Made by a program: the position numbers and the translations under genes
In this document: piece by piece, positions 29,239-40,400 of the stretch
How the letters are laid out: the number at the start of each line of letters is the position of its first letter
Numbering within the stretch: position 1 is the first letter of the stretch
The notes under the pieces: model-generated
What the model was told of the DNA's origin: nothing
The model's input: the letters and a program-made list of their open reading frames with translations, nothing else
Databases searched by the model: none
Assembly (NCBI RefSeq): GCF_003704095.1
Contig: NW_020844815.1
Location: 62,001-126,000, forward strand
Source: Pocillopora damicornis
Lineage: Eukaryota
Direction: 5' to 3'
Length of the DNA: 64,000 bases

Positions 29239-30152
29239 AAATGTATATACACTGTCGCTTTACGCAGACGCGTTTATGCATGGAAACACGGGTCTTGTTT
29301 TATTACTGAGAACGAAAATGTGAAAAAAAACTGTGAAGAGTTACGTCGTCCATATGACGATGTTATACCAATGAAAACATGCATTTATGTAGAGATAGTG
29401 TCTCTTGTGCAGATGTCTGGCATCATCTTTGAAAAAATGCAACGGATGCAATCCGGCGTAGGACTTTCCAACAAGAGCAAAGTAAACCTTGAAGCTTCTA
29501 TTGATGGAATCAGTAAAATACACTGAAGGCAATCCAGTGGAGCTGTTACTATTTCAAAGAGTATCCAAGTTGCTTTAATCAGAATTCGCCAGGGTTGCTC
29601 CTTCTATGCGGGGCGCGGTGTGCAAAGACACGTAATTTCTGCATGCGTTGATGCGTTGACTTTAGAGCCTGCACTGCAGTTCGGTCTTGCCTTGGTATAA
29701 GACTACTAAGAGACCTTTAATACAGTATATTTCAGAACCCTCTTGACTTCATAGATTGGAAAATAAGAGAGAAAAGGGAAAACTGTTCTCGTTGGCCTCG
29801 TTATCTTTAACTAAAATTTTGAAAACGAAAAATCTCTACGGGCTTCAATGCTTTCAAGCTCCCGGTGTGGGAAGAGGAAAATGAAGATGAAGTAACGACG
29901 ACGATGGACTGGATAGTGTTATCTCATAACTCACAGTGTAATAATAAAGGATATCAGCACGATTTGAGTCAAAGCGAGTGTCAGACTAGTTATTTATGTT
30001 TGTAAATGCATACCTTATTTCGAATACGTTCACGGATTTTATCCACACGTGAAGGACCAAAACCATCACTGGAACGAATTCGTCCGTGTAAGGTAAGGTA
30101 AGGTAAGGTCTTTGATATATGTATATATCAAAGGAAATAGATATATGTGCAC

Positions 30153-30153
30153 A

Positions 30154-30178
<25 letters not shown>
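30153..30178. repeat. (TA)n microsatellite
   Basis: Perfect TA run of about 12 units. Confidence 0.95.
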
Positions 30179-30184
<6 letters not shown>

Positions 30185-30429
30185 GCCTTAAAATGGTCAA
30201 GCTTTGATTTATTTTGGCAGTTTTATCAGATATTATTTTTGTGCTTAAAAATACATTAAAGCCTTCCGTTGAACACTCAAATATTTAACAAAAATATTAG
30301 TCCTTTTAAGACGACCACACCCTGTTTATGCCAAAGCACCACTCTGCAAAATGGCACATTGACTTCGAATCTGGATTGTGATTCAAAACAAAATCAGTGG
30401 AATAGTTTACTATCAGATAGTTGTCGTGT

Positions 30430-30683
30430 GACGAGAGCGCCGCCAAATTGGCCTTTGTTCTTAAAATTCTTAGTGTGGCTGTGTTCCTGCGCTCGCAAGG
30501 TGACAAAAGCGAATTTACTTCCTTGGCGCTTTTTAGAACCAAATACCTAGTTGTATGCTGTGATCATCCGCCCCCCTCCCTCCCCCTAAGTATGAATGGC
30601 CACAGAATACTGTGAGGCAACAGTGGCAGCCCGCGTCACCTTTTCCCGCCAATTTGAGAACTGTTCTCAAGAAATAATCCGAC
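30430..30683 (+). promoter_or_regulatory. Proximal promoter of the RAD51AP2-like gene with E2F-type sites
   Basis: TTTTCCCGCCAA at 30641-30652, about 30 bp upstream of the ATG. Further GCGCCGCCAAA (~30437) and TTGGCGC (~30523) motifs. Confidence 0.5.
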
Positions 30684-33600
30684 ATGGGTTGCGGTGAGTA
30701 TTTTCAGTCCACAAGTTTTAGTTTTTCTCAGTTTATCTTCAAATCGCTTATTCTCAATAGCGTATTTTGTTTCATATTTAATATGTTGCTTGGCACAAGT
30801 TAAACAGATCTACCCTATAAATCAAGTTAAGCTAGTTTAGAGCTCTGTAAACAATTCGTGATGATATTTTTTGAAAGAATATTTTTTGAAAGTTTCTGCA
30901 AGTAACTGTTTTTCTTCCTTTTTGTCTTTGTTTTATTACTTGTATCAGGCATTTGCTTTGTTCCCTTTTTTCATTTTGCAGAATGTTGGATAATCTGATC
31001 CGAAGATTCCTAAGTATGGATGAAGCATCACAAAAGTCATTTTATGACGGTAAGCAGCTCTATTCTTGTACCAGATGTGAATTAATATTGTAGGCATATC
31101 AGTCGGAAAAAGGAGAGGTTGAATTGAATTTCCATGCTTGTATTCTTTTGGCATATTAGTCGAAGGAGCTTGGGTTAAATTGCGTTATGACAAAATTGGT
31201 GTTGAGCTGAGACGATGTCATTTAATAAGAGCAGTATTTCCAGTGACACCTTTCGAAGTTAAATTCATTAATTTGGACAAATTTCGTTCCAAGGAAAAAC
31301 GAACCTGTTAAAATAAGACTTTCGTAATGATAAAAGGTAGACCCAGAGAAAGCAAGACATATGAATCACATTAAAATATGTCGAAATGCTACAAGAAGAG
31401 AATTCCATTATTTGGAACTCGAGGCGTACTTGCATTACACTGTCTGACAGTAGAAGTCAAATAAAGTATGCCAGTTATTGTCATTCTAAACATAATGCTA
31501 ACAGACAAGTAATAAAAATAGGTCCGCACTGCATAAGTGTGTCTAGTACAAATTGAAAGGAATGTAATGTATTATAAGATAATTACATGCTAACAGTTGT
31601 GGTGCACTTTAAGTCTATTTGGAAGGTATACTGAATAGATATAAGTGGATTCATATGTGTACCAAAGTGCAGTAGTTTTCAAGGAAGTTTTTGGGTAAAC
31701 TATTTAACAAGTAGACGTTGAGTTCCGAGTCTTCTAAGCGAATCGATGCACGGGAGATTTTGTCAACTAATCAGAAGCAAAACTAAAACAAATTATGACT
31801 ACCGAAGACCAGAACTTTGCAAATATTTAAGTAACAGCAAATAAAATTTCAATATAAAATTAGTTTTTGGAAAAAATGGGAACGGAATAAACGGAAGATT
31901 TCAACACGAAGACTACGGATTTATGGCTTCATTTGTTTTCAACTATGCGGCCAAAATAGTTAGTGCATTTTTTAACAGAGAGAACATTGATGATATCGTA
32001 TTATTCCTTGACTGTATTCCTAATTGTCACAAATTAAGACGTTAATTAATGGTTCTCTAATCCATTAATGACGTCATTACTCTGATTAAGTTAAATACGT
32101 CAACTGATTCATCATGCCGCTGGAAAGCAGTTGCCTGAAACATTGATTAAGATCATTTGTTAAATTTTACCAGATGATCTTCAAGTGGGTGGATTTACAT
32201 CGAATGTTTTAGGAAAACTGAAGGAGGAAAGGCAGCTCGTCTTTAAAAGCGGCAGCGAGCAACTGATAGAGAGAATATCGGAATCAATCAGTCATGAACA
32301 ACGTGGAAACGATCAATCTGAATGTACAGTCCCTGTTTATGATGAGCAAATATGCCAATTAGAAACACCTCAAGTTACGACAGATCACGCAACATTATCT
32401 ATGTCAAATTCTCTGGCTCAAGATCGAAGAACAGTTACACCCGCAGGGTTACGCGCTGAAATGCTGATGATAGAGCAGGGGGCAGATCCACGTGAACTTC
32501 CCGCCAAGTTAACTGTTACCTGCTCAAAAGACAACTTCGAGTGTAGCGAAGATAACGCGGGAAAGAAATCAGTCGCCGTGCAACCTGGATTCTTCTTTGA
32601 TTGGAAAGTCTGTGGGAAGTTTGAACATGATCGGATAAACAAAGGTTAGCGAAAATGATGGGTGTGCTTTGAATGACATGTTAAAAGAACGCTTAAATTT
32701 AGACTTGTGAATTAAGAGCAGGAGGCCCATAATGTTCTCATATCACAGTGCGTTGACTTTCTTTGCCTGATCCACCGAGTTGTCTCTTTGTGAGAGTACT
32801 TCAACGTAACTTTTCCAGCATAGTAAATGTGTCACGGATGACTACGAAATTGTCTGCTAACACGCACACCGCGCCATGACAAAACAGTGAGGTCAAGGAA
32901 TCACGAATTACTTATGTTTTTTTTTCAGCGTCAGTTTTTTGGCCACCCATCGGAATCAAGTCACCAGCAATGGGGACTAAAGGTAAGTTTGTTTTCTTTC
33001 CTTATTTGATGTTGCGGTCGAAGGTATTCATTTTTTGATGCTGACAGATGTAAGGCCTAGATCGATTCTTAGCATCATTTTCCTGTATACTGATTATAGC
33101 AAAGTGTTTTCTTCTTCCAATCACAATTCTTGTTAAGTTTACTTTTCCGCTTTCATAGCTACATACCGACCCACGATATCATTCTTTACTATGGTTGAAG
33201 AAGCTCATCTGCTACCTATGGAAAAAATCGAGCAAATTAAGAATCAGTTCCACAGTAAGCATTCAGATCAAGATCCCAGAGTCCTGAAGAGAAAGAGCCC
33301 TGTTCACGAGAGAATATGCTTACGTGCTGAAAAGTTCGGCAAAATGGACTTAGACGATGACACAGACAATTTCACCGAGGATCACCAGCTCTTTTCCCAA
33401 GAAGGAACGAGTTCTGATTGCAGCCTTGGTCCTCACGTTGGCCTTGATCAAGAGGTACCCATTCAGCATGAAGACGGAAACTCCAAGGAAAAGGCAAAGG
33501 GAATGTCAGACGGACAATTGCCTCGAAATATGTTAATGAAAGTAAGCTCTTTCAACAAAGGACCACTGCCTGACTCCGAAGAAAACCGACTAACCTGGCA

Positions 33601-36600
33601 GAGTTCACAGGCAGACCCCTATCTGATTGAAAAAGCGCCATATTACGGTGTAAACACCGTAGAAACATGCACTGAATCGCTTTGCCCAAAATTGGCCAAG
33701 CAAAGTTGCTTCCCCGGAAATGATAAAAAAAGTTCAAAGGAAACAATCTTATCTGGATGTACTGTAGCTGAAGTATTGTCAACGTGCGCGAAGTTTCAAT
33801 GTGGTCACTCATGCCTCGCGGCCGACCACCCTGAGGGCAACTCAGAACCAGCAGAGAAAGAACATGTACTCAACATCATCAACGATGACTCAACTAATGT
33901 TCAGTTATATAAAGTGTCCAATAGCTTGCATGAATTTAACCATGACTTCTCATGCCAGTATCCACCACTAGCCCAGAGAATGTCCATCGACACGTGCTCG
34001 TCTCTTCGTGCAATAGGTCAACATGACCTGATAACAAACGTGAGTCGTTTTTCGATATAGTAATATAAATATGGAAATATATATGGAGACTAACTGATCA
34101 GTTAGGATGATTTAAACATTTTGCTCAGGTATCTAACCGGCAGTTAAGAGACAACCAACAGCTTTATTTCCCAGTATTCTAACCCCTAACTTCTCAGGCA
34201 CAACAATGACTACAATCAAAATTTTGCCTTAGTGTTCATCAAACTGGAACTACTTTTGTTCGTTTCTGCTGAAGTAAAATAACTCTGCGTCTCTGATTAA
34301 ATCCTGTCGCTATGATATAGGTTAGCTTTGATGACATGGATGTCAGTCCGTTACGTTCGGGAAGAGATTTATTGAAAGGAAAAATGCAGGTGTTGCACGA
34401 ACGAGAAGAGGTCATTGACTGGATGAGCCGCAGAACTGTGGTAGCGGAAGACCGACCTTTTAAAGGTTTAGAGCGCTTTTCTCCGATCTTATCAGAGAAC
34501 AGCTTCAACCATTGTACTCTTTTACATCCTGAATGTTTTGACAAAGTCAGACTGGATGACTTTCCAGACAACTCCTTGAATATCCAACCCGTCTCCCTCA
34601 TAGGAGAAGCACGAAACCAAACTAAAAAGGTTTGTGAGGGCAACCCTGAGAAAATTTTGATCACTGGTGTCCCAGTGGACTCGGGAAAAATGGATTGCCC
34701 TCAGGACATTTGTGATCAAACAACTATAGAAAACATGGAAACGGAAGAAGTTGCAGACCACCGAGAAATAAAGGTAACGAAAAATTATCCTAGTAAAGTA
34801 AATGCCAATCAGATCACAACCGCTCGAGCTCCAAATGACAAACAAGGGATGGCAAATTTGAGAACAGGAGATGACCACCCAACAATGGAAAGTAAGGATG
34901 ACGCAGGAGAATTCAATTTTGGTCATCAAAAAGATCAACGTCTTGAAGCCGCTTCAGGTCAGATATAAAATCATAGTACAAATTGTGTATTATTAAAAGC
35001 TATCAAAGTAGGAAAGGAATGATCTCTCGCTATTAGTTAAGAGTGATTTATATCACTTTCATGAGAGCTTGATAATTGTGGAATTGTTTTTTTTTTTCAG
35101 AAGAGATAAAAGATGAGAAGGAAAGCGATCACTTTCGAGCCGAAATCGAAAGGGGGATGATGAAATTGGATGGCCCTGAGCTACTTCATTTTGCCATGAT
35201 TTTTGTTAAAGGAGCTTTGGAAAAATCTCAGGTGTGTTAGTGTTCGAAAGGTGCCAGAGAAGTTGGTAGTTATCTCTCTGTGTCGCGCCCCTCTTAGTTA
35301 CCTCTCTTTTTGTAAAGTACAGATGGTGGAAAGACGTTAAGTGGCTATCAATGGAATGTAGTCACAAAAGCTTAATTAAGACAATCGCTGTATGAGTATA
35401 ACTCATGCTTTCAATAAACCAATATTGGAGAAATTTCCAAGTGGTTGTCGAAAAAAACCCGGATGGCTTTGATTTTGCTTAGCGCCGCTTTGTGATTGGT
35501 TTAGAAACTGGCGCCACCCTCTGACAAAATCAGATGCGAGACTATTTCTAATTTGTGACATGGTCAATCGCGTTTTCGTGCGCCGGAAACAATTTGTTGA
35601 TTTCACTTTGAGTTCTCATTGGCTTGTTATGTTATCCACTATTGCAATTTAACGCTGTGATTACTTTGGCTTTGGTTTTACAACACTTAAACTGTTTTTA
35701 CTACGATTTTAAATTTCAGTAAAAGCATTTCAACTTTGACTTGTAGGGCAAGGAAAATATAACTAGGATCTTTAAGATTCAAAGCTTTTTTCACAGATTG
35801 TACCTAGCTGCAACGGAGAGTTCGAAAGCGAAAAACGGAGTAAGAACTTGCGCCAAACAACATCTGCGTTTTCATGGAAAAATGACATCCTTCATCAAAA
35901 TCAGCAGGCAAAAGCCTCTGAACCTATAGAGAACGACTCACCCATTACAGGACAAGGTATTACTTGAGTTTCAATGTGAAAGAAGTTGAGAGAGACGGAA
36001 AGACAATACAAACAACCAACAAACCATATAAAGCATACAAGCTTGCAAGAACTGCCAACAGTGCATCTTTTTTTAACTACAGTATGCATAACATTTAAAA
36101 ATAATTCCTAGTTGAAAATACCGTTGTCATAACTTCTATTATAACATAGCTGGTAAATTTGTTTAATCAAATTCAATTGCGCGAGCGTGCTCCATATTCC
36201 TATTGTGCACGCTCATGACGTCAGTAAACAAATCCCTCAAGAAAAAAAATTTTCCATCGGGTTGAAAATGTTATAAAACAATTGGTTCATACGTCAGCTG
36301 TGCGTTCATCGAGATATGAAGCACTTGGGAAGTTTGGAGGACACTCAAGAAGCTAGAGTTGCTCTCGGCTACGCTCCCTGTGCATCTTTCGTGCTCTCCA
36401 AACTTCCCGCTTCATATCTCGATGAACGTACGCTGACGTATGAACCAATTGTTAAATATGAGGAAATTCAGGCATCGTGATATTTATTTACTCCCAGTGA
36501 TGTTACTTCCGGAAGGTTAGGTGATCTCACAAAAGCTAAGCCAGCGCCCTCCTGTTGGGCTCAGAGGCAGCGAAGTTTACTCCCCGTTCAGTTCAAAACG

Positions 36601-36894
36601 ATTATTCAACTGGTTACCGCTGATTTCCTGAAAAACGAACGGGATGGGGCACTGGAGTGAAACGTTTCATGAGCTGATATGACTTTTTTTATTGAACGTT
36701 TTTACCGTTTTCTTTAAGCAGACAGCGAATTCGAAGAGAATGGTGACGGCATGGAGGTTGAATATAAAGAAGGAACACCATTTCTGGTCAGACCTTTACC
36801 GAAGACTTCCAGCAACCGCCCCCTTCGACTCGGATTGTCCAGAATATATAGATGTAAATCATTACATCCTTGCCTCAAGAAGAACCTTGAATGA
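30684..36894 (+). CDS. RAD51AP2-like protein with a C-terminal RAD51-interacting motif; approx. 844 aa, mostly low-complexity/disordered
   Basis: Exons 30684-30693 (ATGGGTTGCG|GTGAGT), 32174-32644, 32929-32982, 33159-34039, 34321-34957, 35101-35231, 35797-35956, optional 36498-36515 and 36722-36894 join in frame (2535 nt). The last exon reads DSEFEENGDGMEVEYKEGTPFLVRPLPKTSSNRPLRLGLSRIYRCKSLHPCLKKNLE*, matching the RAD51AP1/RAD51AP2 motif R(L/I)GLSRxxxxKxLHP. The gene structure is well supported; orthology is inferred. Confidence 0.75.
36276..36455. mobile_element. Palindromic non-autonomous element
   Basis: AACAATTGGTTCATACGTCAGC...CGTTCATCGAGATATGAAGC and its reverse complement GCTTCATATCTCGATGAACG...GCTGACGTATGAACCAATTGTT. 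Confidence 0.8.
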
Positions 36895-37401
36895 GAACCA
36901 AACGGCACAAAAAGTTACCATAGCGACTGAAATAATCTACAAGAATAGTTTCTCGATATAGAACTTATGGTGTTTTCCATTAAGTGGAATAACTTAAACC
37001 TAAATGGGTAAGAACACTGGTTACTCGTCAATTAAAGCTCTTAAGAAGACGAAAAGAAGTGTTTTATTCACCTTTAGTAAAGAAATTGTCAAGAAAAATT
37101 CGGTATGGCTAATATCGAACTAGCAGATTTTCTCAGGAGGCGTTATAAAAGGTATCGATTAAGACAATGCAGTCAAAGTGCTGTGCCCCATTAGGTCAAA
37201 CAATACACAAACTTTGCGAAAATAGGTTTAATAAGCTATTGCTCTCGCGAATCATTTACAATATTCACCAGATAGTTTATAGTTTTAGTTTCAGCCCTCT
37301 AGAGTTAAGAAGCTGTTTCAGTCACTGAGAGAACCAGATTCTACTTTAGTTTAAAACCGATTCGTTCAATGATTTGAATTAAGCAGCCAAGCGATTCTAA
37401 G

Positions 37402-40400
37402 CTATTCTAAGTTAACAAAGGTTGCATCTGTCGCAACACCGCAGTTATTATCCTTTTGAGACATGAGGACATAGCCATCGTTGCCCCAGTGTGTAGACCA
37501 CGAATTCTTTATCAGCCAGTAAGCTTGCCCATTCATGGTGCCGTATCCAACGGCAAGCACTGCGTGATCCAAATCTTCGGGTTTATTTCCTAACAGAGAG
37601 TGAAAATATGTTATTTAAAGCTAACAAAGACGGCTATGTGCATACATTGGTCTAAAAACTCAAGTCCCTCTTCAAAACAGACAAATACTGAGGCGAAAAA
37701 AGGTTAAACATTCGAAAATGTTGGGGAATTAGTCGATACTATTAGACAACTTTAATTGGAAAAAGTTATTGTTGAAGTTTAAAGTAAAAGTTATTTAATT
37801 AGAAAACTCTGATGCAAAATGCATACGATCCATTACCTTCTTTCTCTACACTGAATTTTCAACAGCTTGATTTAGGAAGACTTTCGCTTAAGAGAATTGC
37901 TAAACATGGTTGGATAGTAACTTAAGACGTACCACACTGAGGCTCGTAGTACACTCCAAACGAGTAGAAAGCAAACGACCTGTGCGAAGCATCTATTCCA
38001 ACTGATACTGGCCCTTTCTGAGCGATGGCAATCTTGAGCGCTTCAAGATCTCCTGAGGTAACGTTTACATAGCTTTCTATTTTGGCACCAATAGTCCCTG
38101 AGTGACATCTCCCATCCTGAGTAGATCGAATAAAAAAAAGTCAGAAAAACAGAAGAAACCACTCTACCGAGTATAAGTTCCTTGATTCACCTGTGCCAGA
38201 TACTGTCCGTAGGTATATTCCGTCGCTATACCACCATGCTTCATTATCCACTGATATGATCGGAACTCCTCTCCGCCATCACATCCGTTGTTACCAAAAC
38301 CCCAAGAACAATCAATCAGATTTTGTTGAGAAAGGCGGACAAGATTCTTCGTCTGCAGGAAATTATAAATAGTAGTGATAGTAATGCTATCCTACTTGTT
38401 AAGCATGAGGGTCTGACAATGGTAGAATCTGTTGTAAAAAGCGCTAGTAAACAACTTGTGATGAATCACAAGGCAGGAAAATCCGAAGGTTAATTGTGTA
38501 TATAAGCTTTGTTTCGATTCGCTTGGAGTTCTGAGAGTAAATTGATTATATCTACCTTGAGAAACAATGCACCTTCAATTGTTCCGGTGGCGCCAAAACT
38601 CCAACACGACCCACACACTGCTTGATCTTTCACAGGGGTCACCGCTCCTAAAATCGACGCAAACAGCTACTTTAATCTACTTGTCTGAAATTCAGTGCCA
38701 ACACAAGGAATTTCAGTCGACGTCAGTTAATTATCTTCGCAACGAAAGAGCAATGAGAATTTAATTATTTTATCAAAGCTTCTCATAAGATGCATTACTC
38801 ATTTCAACTCACCGCCACAACGTGAAAATCATTTACAATTCTCCACTGTTTCTAAAATCTTCCAACTTAGAGTGCAAGTATACAATAAACACATTTTACA
38901 AACCAACATATTACTTTCCCCATAATGGATGTTTTAAAATTAATACGCGATGTCATAGGAATAATAAAAATTTCGAGAATGCGAAAAATCTACTTTTACG
39001 ATTAAAGTTTCACTCATAAAACTGCTATTACATTTTTCCATTACACGTAAATTGCGTTACCATAAAGTCGCCAATTCATAGTATCCGGGACATCCTTCAA
39101 AGTTGACAAGTCTGGTTTAAATGGAAGGCCACCGTTGTATCCTTCTGTATAAGTACGCCCCCTAAGTACTCTGAGCTCTTCAGTTGAGCGATCTGCCAGA
39201 TGATTTACAGCTACTTGAAAACCAACGTGCTTACGATTGTGCGAATTTATGAACCTGAAATCAAAGTTAGGCTCCACATAAGATAAATGTTAATACTTTC
39301 ACTCCCAAGATTTTATTGGTAATTCTCCTCGCCGTCTGCTCGTAATGTTCGGAGAATTTGGTATTGGATTAACTAACTATCCCTAATTGATATTTTTCTT
39401 TATTCTCATCGCTTGTCTACTTGATATTGTATTGACATCGTAAGGGGAAATTCTGTCTTGATCACTCAAAGGATAAAGGGTTATGCAATTGCAGACGATT
39501 ACGTTAGTGGAAAAACGTAACAAAAACACATTCACTTTTTTTACCAGTTTTCAAAAGATTATTACAATTAAAGCTTTCCCTTTCCTCTGGGCCAATCATG
39601 AATTGAAAACAGGTACTTCTTTTGGTTGCTAAAATTTGTTACAGCAACGTAAGATACAACTCACAAAACCAGTACCGGAAAATCCACAATTCCAAGTTAC
39701 TTTTCATGATTAAAATATTACCGAAACTTTTGGAGTTAACTTAAAGCTGTAAGGTTCCTCGCCAATATCATTCGGTACTGAGTTTACTAAATGAATCGAA
39801 TCTCTGACTTCAAAACAAACCCACGTTATTCTGCCCCAAAATTACCGGCTGACATGAAATAGGGAGTGTTAAGTTTATTTCTCTTAAAATGGAAAGTTTA
39901 CCGACTCCTTGTTTAAGATTGATCACAATTTGCAAGCTATCCTTGTTTTATGTTTTAATAATAATTTTAATACTATGTTTTAAACTTAATATTTCGTTTA
40001 AGAGAATCATAATTTGAGTTCTAAATTTTCAGCAAGTCAAGGAATAGAACTAAACATCGCTTCTGTCAAGCTTTCCTAAAGGTTAATTTTGTCGCAGTAA
40101 AAACAGGTGCAAATCGACCGATACCAACGGCAATGAGAACAATTTTGATTATTATTTTTCTATCAGGCAAACAATATCGATGAAGCTTTGAATTAACGTA
40201 AGTGAGCATTAGAGAAATATTGGTAACGTTATCCGTGAACCTTCAATTAAAAATAGGAAACCTCCGCTGCTCGTTTCGCGGCTTGGCCGCCTCTATTTTC
40301 ATCGAGCCCGTAAAAATCCGTTAGCACTGTGGGCAACTCTAACGCGACTAATGGGATTTTCCTTTCAAAAGTGCACGTCTAAAAACCTTAATATAATGAA

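What the first reader, a model, noticed from the sequence alone, without database searches (positions are those of the whole stretch)
30684..36894. Hidden RAD51AP2-like recombination gene in an apparent non-vertebrate (coral-like) genome
Seen in sequence: the unannotated-looking ORFs at 32185, 33191 and 34336 join with small exons into one ~844-aa reading frame. Its last exon (36722-36894) is in a frame absent from the ORF track and reads GTPFLVRPLPKTSSNRPLRLGLSRIYRCKSLHPCLKK. Established knowledge: RAD51AP1 and RAD51AP2 share a C-terminal RAD51-binding motif. As I recall, it reads LRLGLSRLARVKPLHP in RAD51AP1 and [29 protein letters not shown] in RAD51AP2. RAD51AP2 was described as vertebrate- and meiosis-specific. 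Inference: the upstream VRPL.KT.S.RP extension, the LHP.LK tail and the long poorly conserved body fit RAD51AP2 better than RAD51AP1. That would place this meiotic RAD51 cofactor before the cnidarian-bilaterian split.
Basis: partly seen in the sequence, partly recalled or inferred. Interest (0 to 1): 0.85.

Follow-up and report, generated by a model that had tools for sequence, protein, structure and literature searches.

The report
Second RAD51-binding-motif gene in coral
An expressed eight-exon coral gene encodes a long, fast-evolving, mostly disordered protein that ends in the short peptide RAD51AP1 and RAD51AP2 use to grip the recombinase RAD51; the residues flanking that peptide look more like RAD51AP2, which has been described as vertebrate-only.

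Summary
RNA contigs from four runs in three studies show seven canonical GT..AG introns. One 2,607-nt contig spans all eight exons, including the joint 35956>36722 into the last exon. The joined frame is open: 857 codons from the first ATG and 846 from the conserved ATG at 31016. The last exon passes Pfam RAD51_interact (29.7 bits, cut-off 25). It carries LRLGLSR, identical to the structurally defined Site-M of human RAD51AP1, and Leu-His at the same spacing as Site-C.

The genome also has a separate RAD51AP1 ortholog on another contig, so this is a second family member. Four other coral assemblies carry collinear orthologs. The body is only 29-56% identical and looks disordered, with a few conserved islands.

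The flanks (NRP[LF] before the core, GLSR-K, LHP-Y-[LF]-KK near the C-terminus) match what two papers report for RAD51AP2 (SRPI; Tyr-Leu-Lys after Leu-His). They do not match the tail shared by coral, starfish and fish RAD51AP1.

I could not obtain a vertebrate RAD51AP2 sequence with these tools, so orthology is plausible (about 0.5) but unproven. Meiotic expression is untested. No search was run on the joined model. The scan holds no other note on this gene.

The parts
31016..31049 (+). Coding part of exon 1. The conserved start codon is at 31016 (MDEASQKSFYD). An upstream in-frame ATG at 30983 is probably not used.
   Evidence: RNA contigs cover at least 30900-31049 and join 31049>32174. MDEASQ.SFY is conserved at the start of the frame in L005, L012, L014 and L015, with stops just upstream. 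SNP 31001 C>T in runs X6 and X12 puts a stop in the 30983 extension.
32174..32644 (+). Exon 2 (471 nt), acidic and poorly conserved.
   Evidence: GT..AG joints in 4 runs. 29-50% identity to collinear exons in 4 other corals.
32929..32982 (+). Exon 3, a 54-nt microexon holding the conserved W-P-x-[IV]-G-[IV]-K-S at 32940-32963. In the window it reads FWPP.
   Evidence: Joints 32644>32929 and 32982>33159 in 4 runs. WP[PAS][IV]G[IV]KS is present in L005, L012, L014 and L015.
33159..34039 (+). Exon 4 (881 nt, 293 codons), a disordered body with short conserved motifs.
   Evidence: RNA contigs. 7 ORF-level homologues at 37-98% identity. Alignment A3 has 49 invariant columns in short islands. AlphaFold2 mean pLDDT is 40.5 with one short helix.
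34321..34957 (+). Exon 5 (637 nt), acidic, the least conserved part.
   Evidence: Joints 34039>34321 and 34957>35101. 21-50% identity in the other corals.
35101..35231 (+). Exon 6. It holds the second most conserved block, at 35118-35231 (...LDGPELL.FAMI.V.GA..KSQ).
   Evidence: Joints in 4 runs. 62-71% identity in L005, L012 and L014, against about 30% for the neighbouring exons. No Pfam hit.
35797..35956 (+). Exon 7 (160 nt), with conserved IVPSC and AFSWK.
   Evidence: Joints 35231>35797 and 35956>36722. Collinear matches in L005, L012 and L014.
36722..36894 (+). Coding part of the last exon, entered in phase 1, with the stop codon at 36892-36894.
   Evidence: The joint 35956>36722 is GT..AG in 3 of 4 runs and lies inside the 2,607-nt contig that spans the whole gene. 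The same phase-1 acceptor is seen in L005 and L014.
36808..36873 (+). Pfam RAD51_interact match (profile positions 17-38 of 39).
   Evidence: 29.6-29.7 bits against a cut-off of 25. Also found by the whole-genome scan at 29.1 bits.
36823..36843 (+). LRLGLSR, the equivalent of RAD51AP1 Site-M, which inserts into the pocket between the RAD51 N-terminal bundle and N-terminal helix.
   Evidence: Identical 7/7 to human RAD51AP1 in PDB 9qnc/9qn8. The Site-M definition and contacts come from PMC12704761. Translation checked.
36862..36867 (+). Leu-His, the equivalent of RAD51AP1 L345/H346 (Site-C) and RAD51AP2 L1143/H1144.
   Evidence: Same six-residue spacing after LRLGLSR as in human RAD51AP1. Mutating these residues abolishes RAD51 binding in both human proteins (PMC1636435; PMC12704761).
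36784..36822 (+). Upstream extension LVRPLPKTSSNRP, specific to this gene's orthologs and absent from RAD51AP1-type proteins.
   Evidence: Conserved in L012, L014, L005, P0004, P0007 and P0044. RAD51AP2 has SRPI at the place of NRPL, and that SRPI is required for RAD51 binding (PMC8754306).
36868..36882 (+). Tail P-C-L-K-K after Leu-His. The other corals have P-Y-L-K-K or P-Y-F-K-K.
   Evidence: Tyr-Leu-Lys after L1143/H1144 is conserved in human, mouse and chicken RAD51AP2 and is 'not conserved in RAD51AP1' (PMC1636435).

Best explanation
This is a real, transcribed, protein-coding gene of a stony coral. It has eight coding exons on the + strand and encodes about 846 aa. The protein is acidic (pI about 5), evolves fast and is largely disordered. 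It has a few conserved short motifs and a basic C-terminal exon carrying a RAD51AP1/RAD51AP2-type RAD51-binding peptide. Inferred mechanism: the terminal peptide docks on a RAD51 protomer as in the RAD51AP1-RAD51 cryo-EM structure. LRLGLSR would sit in the hydrophobic pocket by the N-terminal domain, and Leu-His in the shallow groove on the ATPase core. This would tether the long body, whose function is unknown, to RAD51 filaments. It is the second RAD51_interact gene in this genome and is distinct from the RAD51AP1 ortholog. Its motif flanks are of the RAD51AP2 type. I put the chance that it is a true RAD51AP2 ortholog at about 0.5. The confidence below is for the gene, its family membership and the RAD51-docking mode.
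For: Shown:
- Spliced RNA with seven GT..AG introns in runs from three studies, and one contig across all exons.
- An open joined frame.
- Collinear orthologs in four other coral assemblies, two of them with the same downstream Peptidase_C1 neighbour.
- Only in-frame indels (+6, -3) and pN/pS of about 0.5 among RNA variants.
- A Pfam RAD51_interact hit above the cut-off.
- LRLGLSR identical to human RAD51AP1 Site-M, with Leu-His at the same spacing.
- The four residues whose mutation kills RAD51 binding in human RAD51AP1 (R316, L319, L328, H329), three of which were also tested with the same result in RAD51AP2, are all present.
- In the host RAD51 gene on C978, the contact positions 50, F92, R95, T119 and Q145 are identical to human, with I100>V and D184>S.
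- A separate RAD51AP1 ortholog lies at C2478:226625-231400. Its Acropora relative is named 'RAD51-associated protein 1-like' by NCBI.

For the RAD51AP2 type:
- NRP[LF], GLSR-K and LHP-Y-[LF]-KK close to the C-terminus in 8 coral sequences, against GLSR-N...KPLH-x-[NHK]-V-x-V in 15 RAD51AP1-type sequences from coral, octocoral, starfish and fish.
- Papers give SRPI and Tyr-Leu-Lys as RAD51AP2 features.
- Motif identity between coral and bilaterian RAD51AP1 is 0.62, against 0.43 between the two coral paralogs.
Against: No binding test was run, and no complex prediction was possible because host RAD51 is available only as small exons. No vertebrate RAD51AP2 sequence was compared, so body homology is untested. 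The window's own copy has Cys where RAD51AP2 has Tyr. The gene structure (8 exons) differs from human RAD51AP2 (one giant exon plus two small ones). Host RAD51 has Ser at the Asp184 position that contacts the motif's His. In one other coral lineage a TGA sits just before the motif, so the motif may be dispensable there.
Confidence: 0.8

Rival explanations
1. A cnidarian- or coral-restricted RAD51 partner that shares only the short motif with RAD51AP2. The terminal exon would have been copied from RAD51AP1 or shuffled, and the RP-aliphatic and Y-[LF]-K flanks would have arisen independently or be selected by the RAD51 surface. The gene would then say nothing about the age of RAD51AP2.
For: Sequences of the window's motif type were found only in coral-derived data. 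The body has no Pfam domain and no recognisable relative outside corals. The exon structure differs from human RAD51AP2. The motif is about 35 aa and sits on its own exon, so it is easy to move. The core is as close to RAD51AP1 as to RAD51AP2.
Against: The searches could not see proteins longer than 1.75 times an exon-sized query, and the one unrestricted search used a mixed two-sequence profile, so absence elsewhere is not informative. RAD51AP1 tails are conserved from coral to fish, so a conserved Y-L-K tail shared with RAD51AP2 is more simply explained by descent. Three separate flank features agree with RAD51AP2.
Confidence: 0.4
2. It is simply the coral's RAD51AP1 ortholog with an unusually long body.
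For: It shares the Pfam family, and LRLGLSR is identical to RAD51AP1.
Against: A collinear six-exon match (65-76% identity) to Acropora 'RAD51-associated protein 1-like' lies on another contig, and its motif scores 41 bits. The window protein is 846 aa and acidic, with a different tail and different upstream flank.
Confidence: 0.02
3. A transcribed pseudogene or chance ORFs: the motif match is fortuitous and the RNA is noise or belongs to the antisense neighbour.
For: Unspliced contigs from about 36432 across the last exon probably belong to the minus-strand protease gene. pN/pS of about 0.5 is relaxed.
Against: Seven + strand GT..AG joints were found in independent studies. The 2.5-kb frame is open. 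Exon order and reading frames are conserved in four other corals at 29-75% protein identity. Indels are in-frame only. The motif is invariant at 24 of 56 last-exon positions.
Confidence: 0.02

Closest known systems
RAD51AP2 (vertebrates; human 1,159 aa, mouse 976 aa; Kovalenko et al. 2006, PMC1636435; Ma et al. 2022, PMC8754306)
   Same: Both are long proteins with no recognisable domain. The RAD51-binding peptide sits at the extreme C-terminus and is wholly encoded by a short last exon. Both share R-x-G-L-S-R, six residues, then L-H. Both have an Arg-Pro-aliphatic triplet directly before the core (SRPI in RAD51AP2, NRPL here). After Leu-His-Pro, RAD51AP2 has Tyr-Leu-Lys; two coral orthologs have exactly Y-L-K-K, four coral sequences have Y-F-K-K, and the window has C-L-K-K. 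The protein ends a few residues later, as in mouse and chicken.
   Different: The core is LRLGLSR, as in RAD51AP1. RAD51AP2 by recollection has I-R-I-G-L-S-R. The coral gene has eight exons rather than one giant exon plus two small ones. Body similarity is untested. Meiosis-specific expression and RAD51-not-DMC1 selectivity are untested. The organism is a cnidarian, whereas the family was described as vertebrate-specific.
RAD51AP1 (human structures 9qnc/9qn8, PMC12704761; invertebrate relatives such as XP_067042660.1 of Acropora muricata and XP_038074751.1 of Patiria miniata)
   Same: Same Pfam family (PF15696). Site-M LRLGLSR is identical, and Site-C Leu-His is at the same spacing. All binding residues proven by mutagenesis are present. 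The motif is at the C-terminus.
   Different: RAD51AP1 is about 300-400 aa and lysine-rich, with GLGGV upstream of the motif and a GLSR-N...KPLH-x-N-V-x-V tail that is conserved from coral to fish. The window protein has none of these. The genome has its own RAD51AP1 ortholog elsewhere. The WVPP DMC1-binding site of RAD51AP1 has no conserved counterpart here.
Other recombinase-binding short motifs (BRCA2 and FIGNL1 FxPP 'P-motifs', PMC11229353)
   Same: The idea is the same: a disordered scaffold carrying short peptides that dock on RAD51 or DMC1. The window's microexon 3 reads F-W-P-P, which fits FxPP.
   Different: In the four other corals the same position reads [GSV]-W-P-[AS], so FxPP is not conserved. 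Only W-P-x-[IV]-G-[IV]-K-S is. No evidence links it to a recombinase.

Membership tests
RAD51_interact family (Pfam PF15696; RAD51AP1 and RAD51AP2) | Match to the family profile above the curated cut-off | tested here: met
   29.6-29.7 bits against 25 for the last exon and 29.1 bits in the genome scan. Coral orthologs P0004, P0007 and P0009 score 25.3-36.3 bits.
RAD51_interact family (Pfam PF15696; RAD51AP1 and RAD51AP2) | Site-M (L-R-L-G-L-S-R) followed after six residues by Site-C Leu-His, including the residues whose mutation abolishes RAD51 binding | tested here: met
   Identical 7/7 to human RAD51AP1 with the same spacing. Residue roles come from PMC12704761 and PMC1636435.
RAD51_interact family (Pfam PF15696; RAD51AP1 and RAD51AP2) | Motif at the extreme C-terminus, wholly encoded by a short last exon | tested here: met
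   RNA joint 35956>36722. The last exon is 173 coding nt, with the stop 6 residues after His+... at 36892. The feature is stated for both human genes in PMC1636435.
RAD51_interact family (Pfam PF15696; RAD51AP1 and RAD51AP2) | Physical binding to RAD51 | not testable with these tools
   Host RAD51 is available only as small exons, so no complex job could be set up by reference. Five of seven named contact positions in host RAD51 are identical to human.
RAD51AP2 (orthology) | Tyr-Leu-Lys directly after Leu-His-Pro, near the C-terminal end | tested here: inconclusive
   Exact in L012, L014 and P0045. Y-F-K in L005, P0004, P0007 and P0044. C-L-K in the window itself. The RAD51AP2 side is known only from the paper's text.
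RAD51AP2 (orthology) | SRPI immediately before the R-x-G-L-S-R core, required for RAD51 binding | tested here: inconclusive
   The corals have N-R-P-[LF], which shares R-P-aliphatic and differs at the first residue. The RAD51AP2 side comes from PMC8754306.
RAD51AP2 (orthology) | Sequence similarity of the long body to vertebrate RAD51AP2 | not tested
   No vertebrate RAD51AP2 sequence could be obtained. Exon-sized queries cannot reach proteins of that length. Searches with the joined model were left out by rule.
RAD51AP2 (orthology) | Expression restricted to meiotic tissue | not testable with these tools
   Only assembled contigs were available, and they cannot rank expression. The transcript is present in poly-A RNA of coral colonies from three studies.
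RAD51AP2 (orthology) | Gene built of one very large exon plus two small ones (human; not strictly defining) | tested here: not met
   Eight coding exons; the largest is 881 nt. The human structure is given in PMC1636435.
RAD51AP1 (orthology) | Being the genome's counterpart of RAD51AP1, with the GLGGV...GLSR-N...KPLH-x-N-V-x-V C-terminus and a lysine-rich body of about 350 aa | tested here: not met
   That gene is at C2478:226625-231400 on the minus strand. The window protein has different flanks and a different body.

The most novel reading that the evidence does not exclude
RAD51AP2 is not a vertebrate invention. The RAD51AP1/RAD51AP2 pair would already have existed in the last common ancestor of cnidarians and bilaterians, and this coral gene would be the RAD51AP2 ortholog. 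Its few conserved islands (the exon-6 block LDGPELL.FAMI, the W-P microexon and the exon-4 motifs) would then point to the still unknown functional parts of RAD51AP2 beyond the RAD51 anchor.
Probability: 0.45. Interest if true: 0.6.

Novelty: new member of a known kind. Interest (0 to 1): 0.5.

Why it matters
RAD51AP2 is needed for X-Y crossover and male fertility in mammals, and since 2006 it has been described as vertebrate-specific. Nothing is known about its 1,000-residue body. A cnidarian counterpart would push the origin of the RAD51AP1/RAD51AP2 pair back before the cnidarian-bilaterian split. It would separate the protein's function from sex-chromosome biology. Through the few islands conserved among corals, it would also give testable candidates for what the body does. 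Even if it is only a lineage-specific RAD51 partner, it shows that the structurally defined Site-M/Site-C peptide is a portable RAD51 anchor used by more than one protein outside vertebrates. The RAD51AP1 side is already annotated in invertebrates, so the age of the motif itself is not news.

Tried and rejected
- Exon-8 peptide against the 5.8-billion protein set: no candidate in the allowed length range. The profile of four coral exon-8 peptides found only three short coral-type fragments.
- Exon 4 search: seven unnamed ORF-level homologues of 285-341 aa. None was long enough to serve as a stepping stone to full-length proteins.
- Representative-library search with a window+RAD51AP1 two-sequence profile: 21 hits, namely RAD51AP1-type proteins, three coral window-type fragments and one bacterial chance hit, P0021. 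No vertebrate RAD51AP2 passed the threshold, which says little given the mixed profile.
- ESM Atlas: nothing above noise.
- JGI metagenome scan: two contigs of another coral only.
- Text search for the RAD51AP2 tail peptide and for supplements of PMC8754306: nothing held. No paper mentions RAD51AP2 together with cnidarians. The two that mention it with invertebrates are unrelated.
- Pfam on all other exons: no hit. Rfam on 30000-38000: nothing.
- FxPP reading of exon 3: rejected as a conserved feature.
- Complex prediction was not run. Host RAD51 is split into small exons, and the only usable piece (86 aa) lacks the ATPase core, so a result would not have moved the odds.
- The joined spliced protein was used only inside a script for a frame, length and composition check. 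No search, fold or complex job was run on it.
Full report
THE OBSERVATION

The quoted peptide lies in the frame of the small ORF 36751..36894. Translating 36722-36894 from its first base gives another frame, because the exon is entered in phase 1.

Pfam RAD51_interact (PF15696) matches the last exon at 29.6-29.7 bits against a curated cut-off of 25, with E about 7e-7. No other exon has a Pfam hit.

TRANSCRIPT EVIDENCE

Twenty-two public runs hold part of the stretch. Fifteen are on record as RNA, and they come from coral or marine metatranscriptomes. I laid four runs from three studies on 30900-36899.

- All four show the same chain of joints, and each resolves to a + strand GT..AG intron.
- One 2,607-nt contig (run X12) runs through every exon, including 35956>36722 into the motif exon.
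- The first joint is reported as CG..CA with one extra letter. It is a canonical 31049>32174 joint with a silent C>T SNP at 31048.

The model is 30983/31016-31049, 32174-32644, 32929-32982, 33159-34039, 34321-34957, 35101-35231, 35797-35956 and 36722-36894. Joined inside a script for a frame check only, it is 2,574 nt with no internal stop. That is 857 codons with a calculated pI of about 5.2.

The conserved start is the second ATG, at 31016, giving 846 aa. Two things support this. Four other corals begin the frame with MDEASQ.SFY and have stops just upstream. A C>T variant at 31001 in two runs creates a stop in the 11-codon extension.

The true 5' end lies upstream of the stretch I could lay reads on.

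Everything was done exon by exon, by reference.

IS IT A GENE UNDER SELECTION?

Variants between the assembly and the RNA contigs comprise 11 synonymous and 21 non-synonymous changes (pN/pS about 0.5). The only indels are +6 and -3 nt.

Exon 4 finds seven ORF-level homologues at 37-98% identity. Fetching their contigs, and that of a last-exon hit, gave four loci from other coral assemblies: L005, L012, L014 and L015.

- All exons present on each contig are collinear with the window.
- L005 and L012 keep the same minus-strand Peptidase_C1 neighbour just downstream.
- Identity is 29-56% in the big exons.
- Identity is 62-71% in exon 6 (...LDGPELL.FAMI.V.GA..KSQ) and 50-75% in the last exon.
- Smaller islands are the start peptide, W-P-x-[IV]-G-[IV]-K-S in the 54-nt microexon 3, and IVPSC/AFSWK in exon 7.

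Exon 4 aligned with its homologues shows short invariant islands in variable sequence. It folds to nothing: mean pLDDT is 40.5 with one short helix. The alignment is shallow, so this fits disorder but does not prove it.

THE MOTIF AND THE LIKELY MECHANISM

The PDB holds human RAD51AP1 bound to RAD51 filaments (9qnc, 9qn8). The window peptide aligns to it with LRLGLSR identical and Leu-His-Pro at the same distance. The structure paper (PMC12704761) describes two sites.

- Site-M is LRLGLSR. It sits in a pocket lined by RAD51 F92, R95, I100 and T119, with the Arg paired to residue 50.
- Site-C is L345/H346. It sits in a groove contacting D184 and Q145.

Kovalenko et al. (PMC1636435) showed that R316, L319, L328 and H329 of RAD51AP1 are needed for binding, as are L1134, L1143 and H1144 of RAD51AP2. 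All have counterparts here.

The host RAD51 gene on contig C978 aligns to human RAD51. Positions 50, 92, 95, 119 and 145 are identical, with I100>V and D184>S.

So docking of the terminal peptide on RAD51 in the RAD51AP1 manner is a strong inference. It was not tested. What the acidic, disordered body does is unknown. The conserved exon-6 block is the best candidate for a second interaction surface.

WHICH FAMILY MEMBER IS IT?

A scan of the whole assembly (234 Mb, 4,393 contigs) with PF15696 finds two loci above the cut-off: the window, and C2478 at 41 bits. C2478 carries six collinear exon matches (65-76% identity) to an Acropora protein. NCBI names cluster-mates of that protein 'RAD51-associated protein 1-like'.

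Anchoring 23 tool-derived sequences on GLSR gives two classes.

- Fifteen RAD51AP1-type sequences, including coral, octocoral, starfish and fish, read GLGGV...[IL]R[LIV]GLSR-N-x-[RK]-x-KPLH-x-[NHK]-V-x-V.
- Eight coral sequences of the window's type read [LV]-x-x-PL-x-x-x-S-x-N-R-P-[LF]-RLGLSR-K...LHP-Y-[LF]-K-K. The window has Ile for the Lys and Cys for the Tyr.

Coral RAD51AP1 motifs are closer to bilaterian RAD51AP1 (0.62 identity) than to the coral paralog (0.43).

For RAD51AP2 I have only what papers state:

- SRPI immediately before the core, essential for RAD51 binding (PMC8754306);
- R1131, L1134, L1143 and H1144;
- the protein ends there in mouse and chicken;
- a short last exon encodes the whole region (PMC1636435).

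It remains a recollection. On these flank features the coral gene is RAD51AP2-like. On the 16-residue core it is as close to RAD51AP1.

Body homology, expression pattern and DMC1 selectivity could not be tested. I put true orthology at about one half. The main rival, at about 0.4, is a lineage-restricted RAD51 partner that shares only the motif.

LIMITS OF THE SEARCHES

The word-indexed protein search accepts only targets of 0.55-1.75 times the query length. Exon-sized queries therefore cannot reach full-length coral models or vertebrate RAD51AP2. The one unrestricted HMMER job used a two-sequence mixed profile and returned 21 hits. The metagenome scan returned only another coral. The finding of window-type sequences only in coral-derived data is therefore weak evidence about the gene's range.

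No paper in the library links RAD51AP2 with cnidarians. The two papers that mention it together with invertebrates are unrelated. RAD51AP1 is already named in echinoderm and coral annotation.

ORGANISM

The runs are labelled coral or marine metagenomes, and organism names are coded. The assembly statistics match what I remember of a published Pocillopora assembly. That is my recollection, not a tool result.

VERDICT

This is a real and well-supported second RAD51_interact gene of corals, with RAD51AP2-type flanks. It is a new member of a known family and of moderate interest. It would be more interesting if RAD51AP2 orthology is confirmed by the comparisons listed under next steps.

Noticed in passing
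window 36225-36460 (last intron): A repeat of about 235 bp with 87-91% identical copies on many contigs (652 first-look candidates). It also matches itself in reverse at 77-82%, so it is MITE-like. RNA depth here is very high and contigs break at its ends.
   Followed up: partly
window 36430-36899 and beyond: In three runs, unspliced contigs start at about 36430-36432 and run through the last intron and the motif exon. In one run they continue for more than 2 kb past 36899. This is probably the 3' end of the minus-strand cathepsin-L-like gene (exons at 37402-37572 and 38490-38642) overlapping the motif exon tail-to-tail.
   Followed up: partly
L018:542-718 and L019:591-767: Two 98%-identical metagenome contigs of another coral have TGA in place of the Arg codon of N-R-P-L, one codon before an otherwise intact PLRLGLSR...LHPYFKK. 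This is a natural truncation that would remove the RAD51 anchor, either recent or polymorphic.
   Followed up: partly
window 32929-32982: A 54-nt microexon with a conserved W-P-x-[IV]-G-[IV]-K-S. In this species it reads F-W-P-P, which fits the FxPP recombinase-binding 'P-motif', but the Phe and second Pro are not conserved in other corals.
   Followed up: yes
window 35118-35231: The exon-6 block (LDGPELL.FAMI.V.GA..KSQ) is 62-71% identical across corals while the flanking exons are about 30%. It has no Pfam match and no known counterpart.
   Followed up: partly
G000:C2478:226625-231400 (L001, L006-L011), minus strand: The RAD51AP1 ortholog of this genome, with six exon matches. NCBI names one isoform of the Acropora relative 'NUCKS1-like', echoing the known RAD51AP1/NUCKS1 kinship. 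Its motif exon is entered in phase 0, about 37 residues before the GLS-Leu. The window gene's is entered in phase 1, at 38-39 residues.
   Followed up: partly
L017 (G000:C978:45500-53500), minus strand: The host RAD51 gene is split into many small exons and has a run of N in this stretch. Human Asp184, which contacts the motif's His, is Ser in the coral.
   Followed up: partly
L014:17296-21026: A Pao/BEL-type retrotransposon (RVT_1, rve, Pao_retrotransp, by the precomputed Pfam hits) lies downstream of the ortholog in that coral, where the window, L005 and L012 have the protease gene.
   Followed up: no
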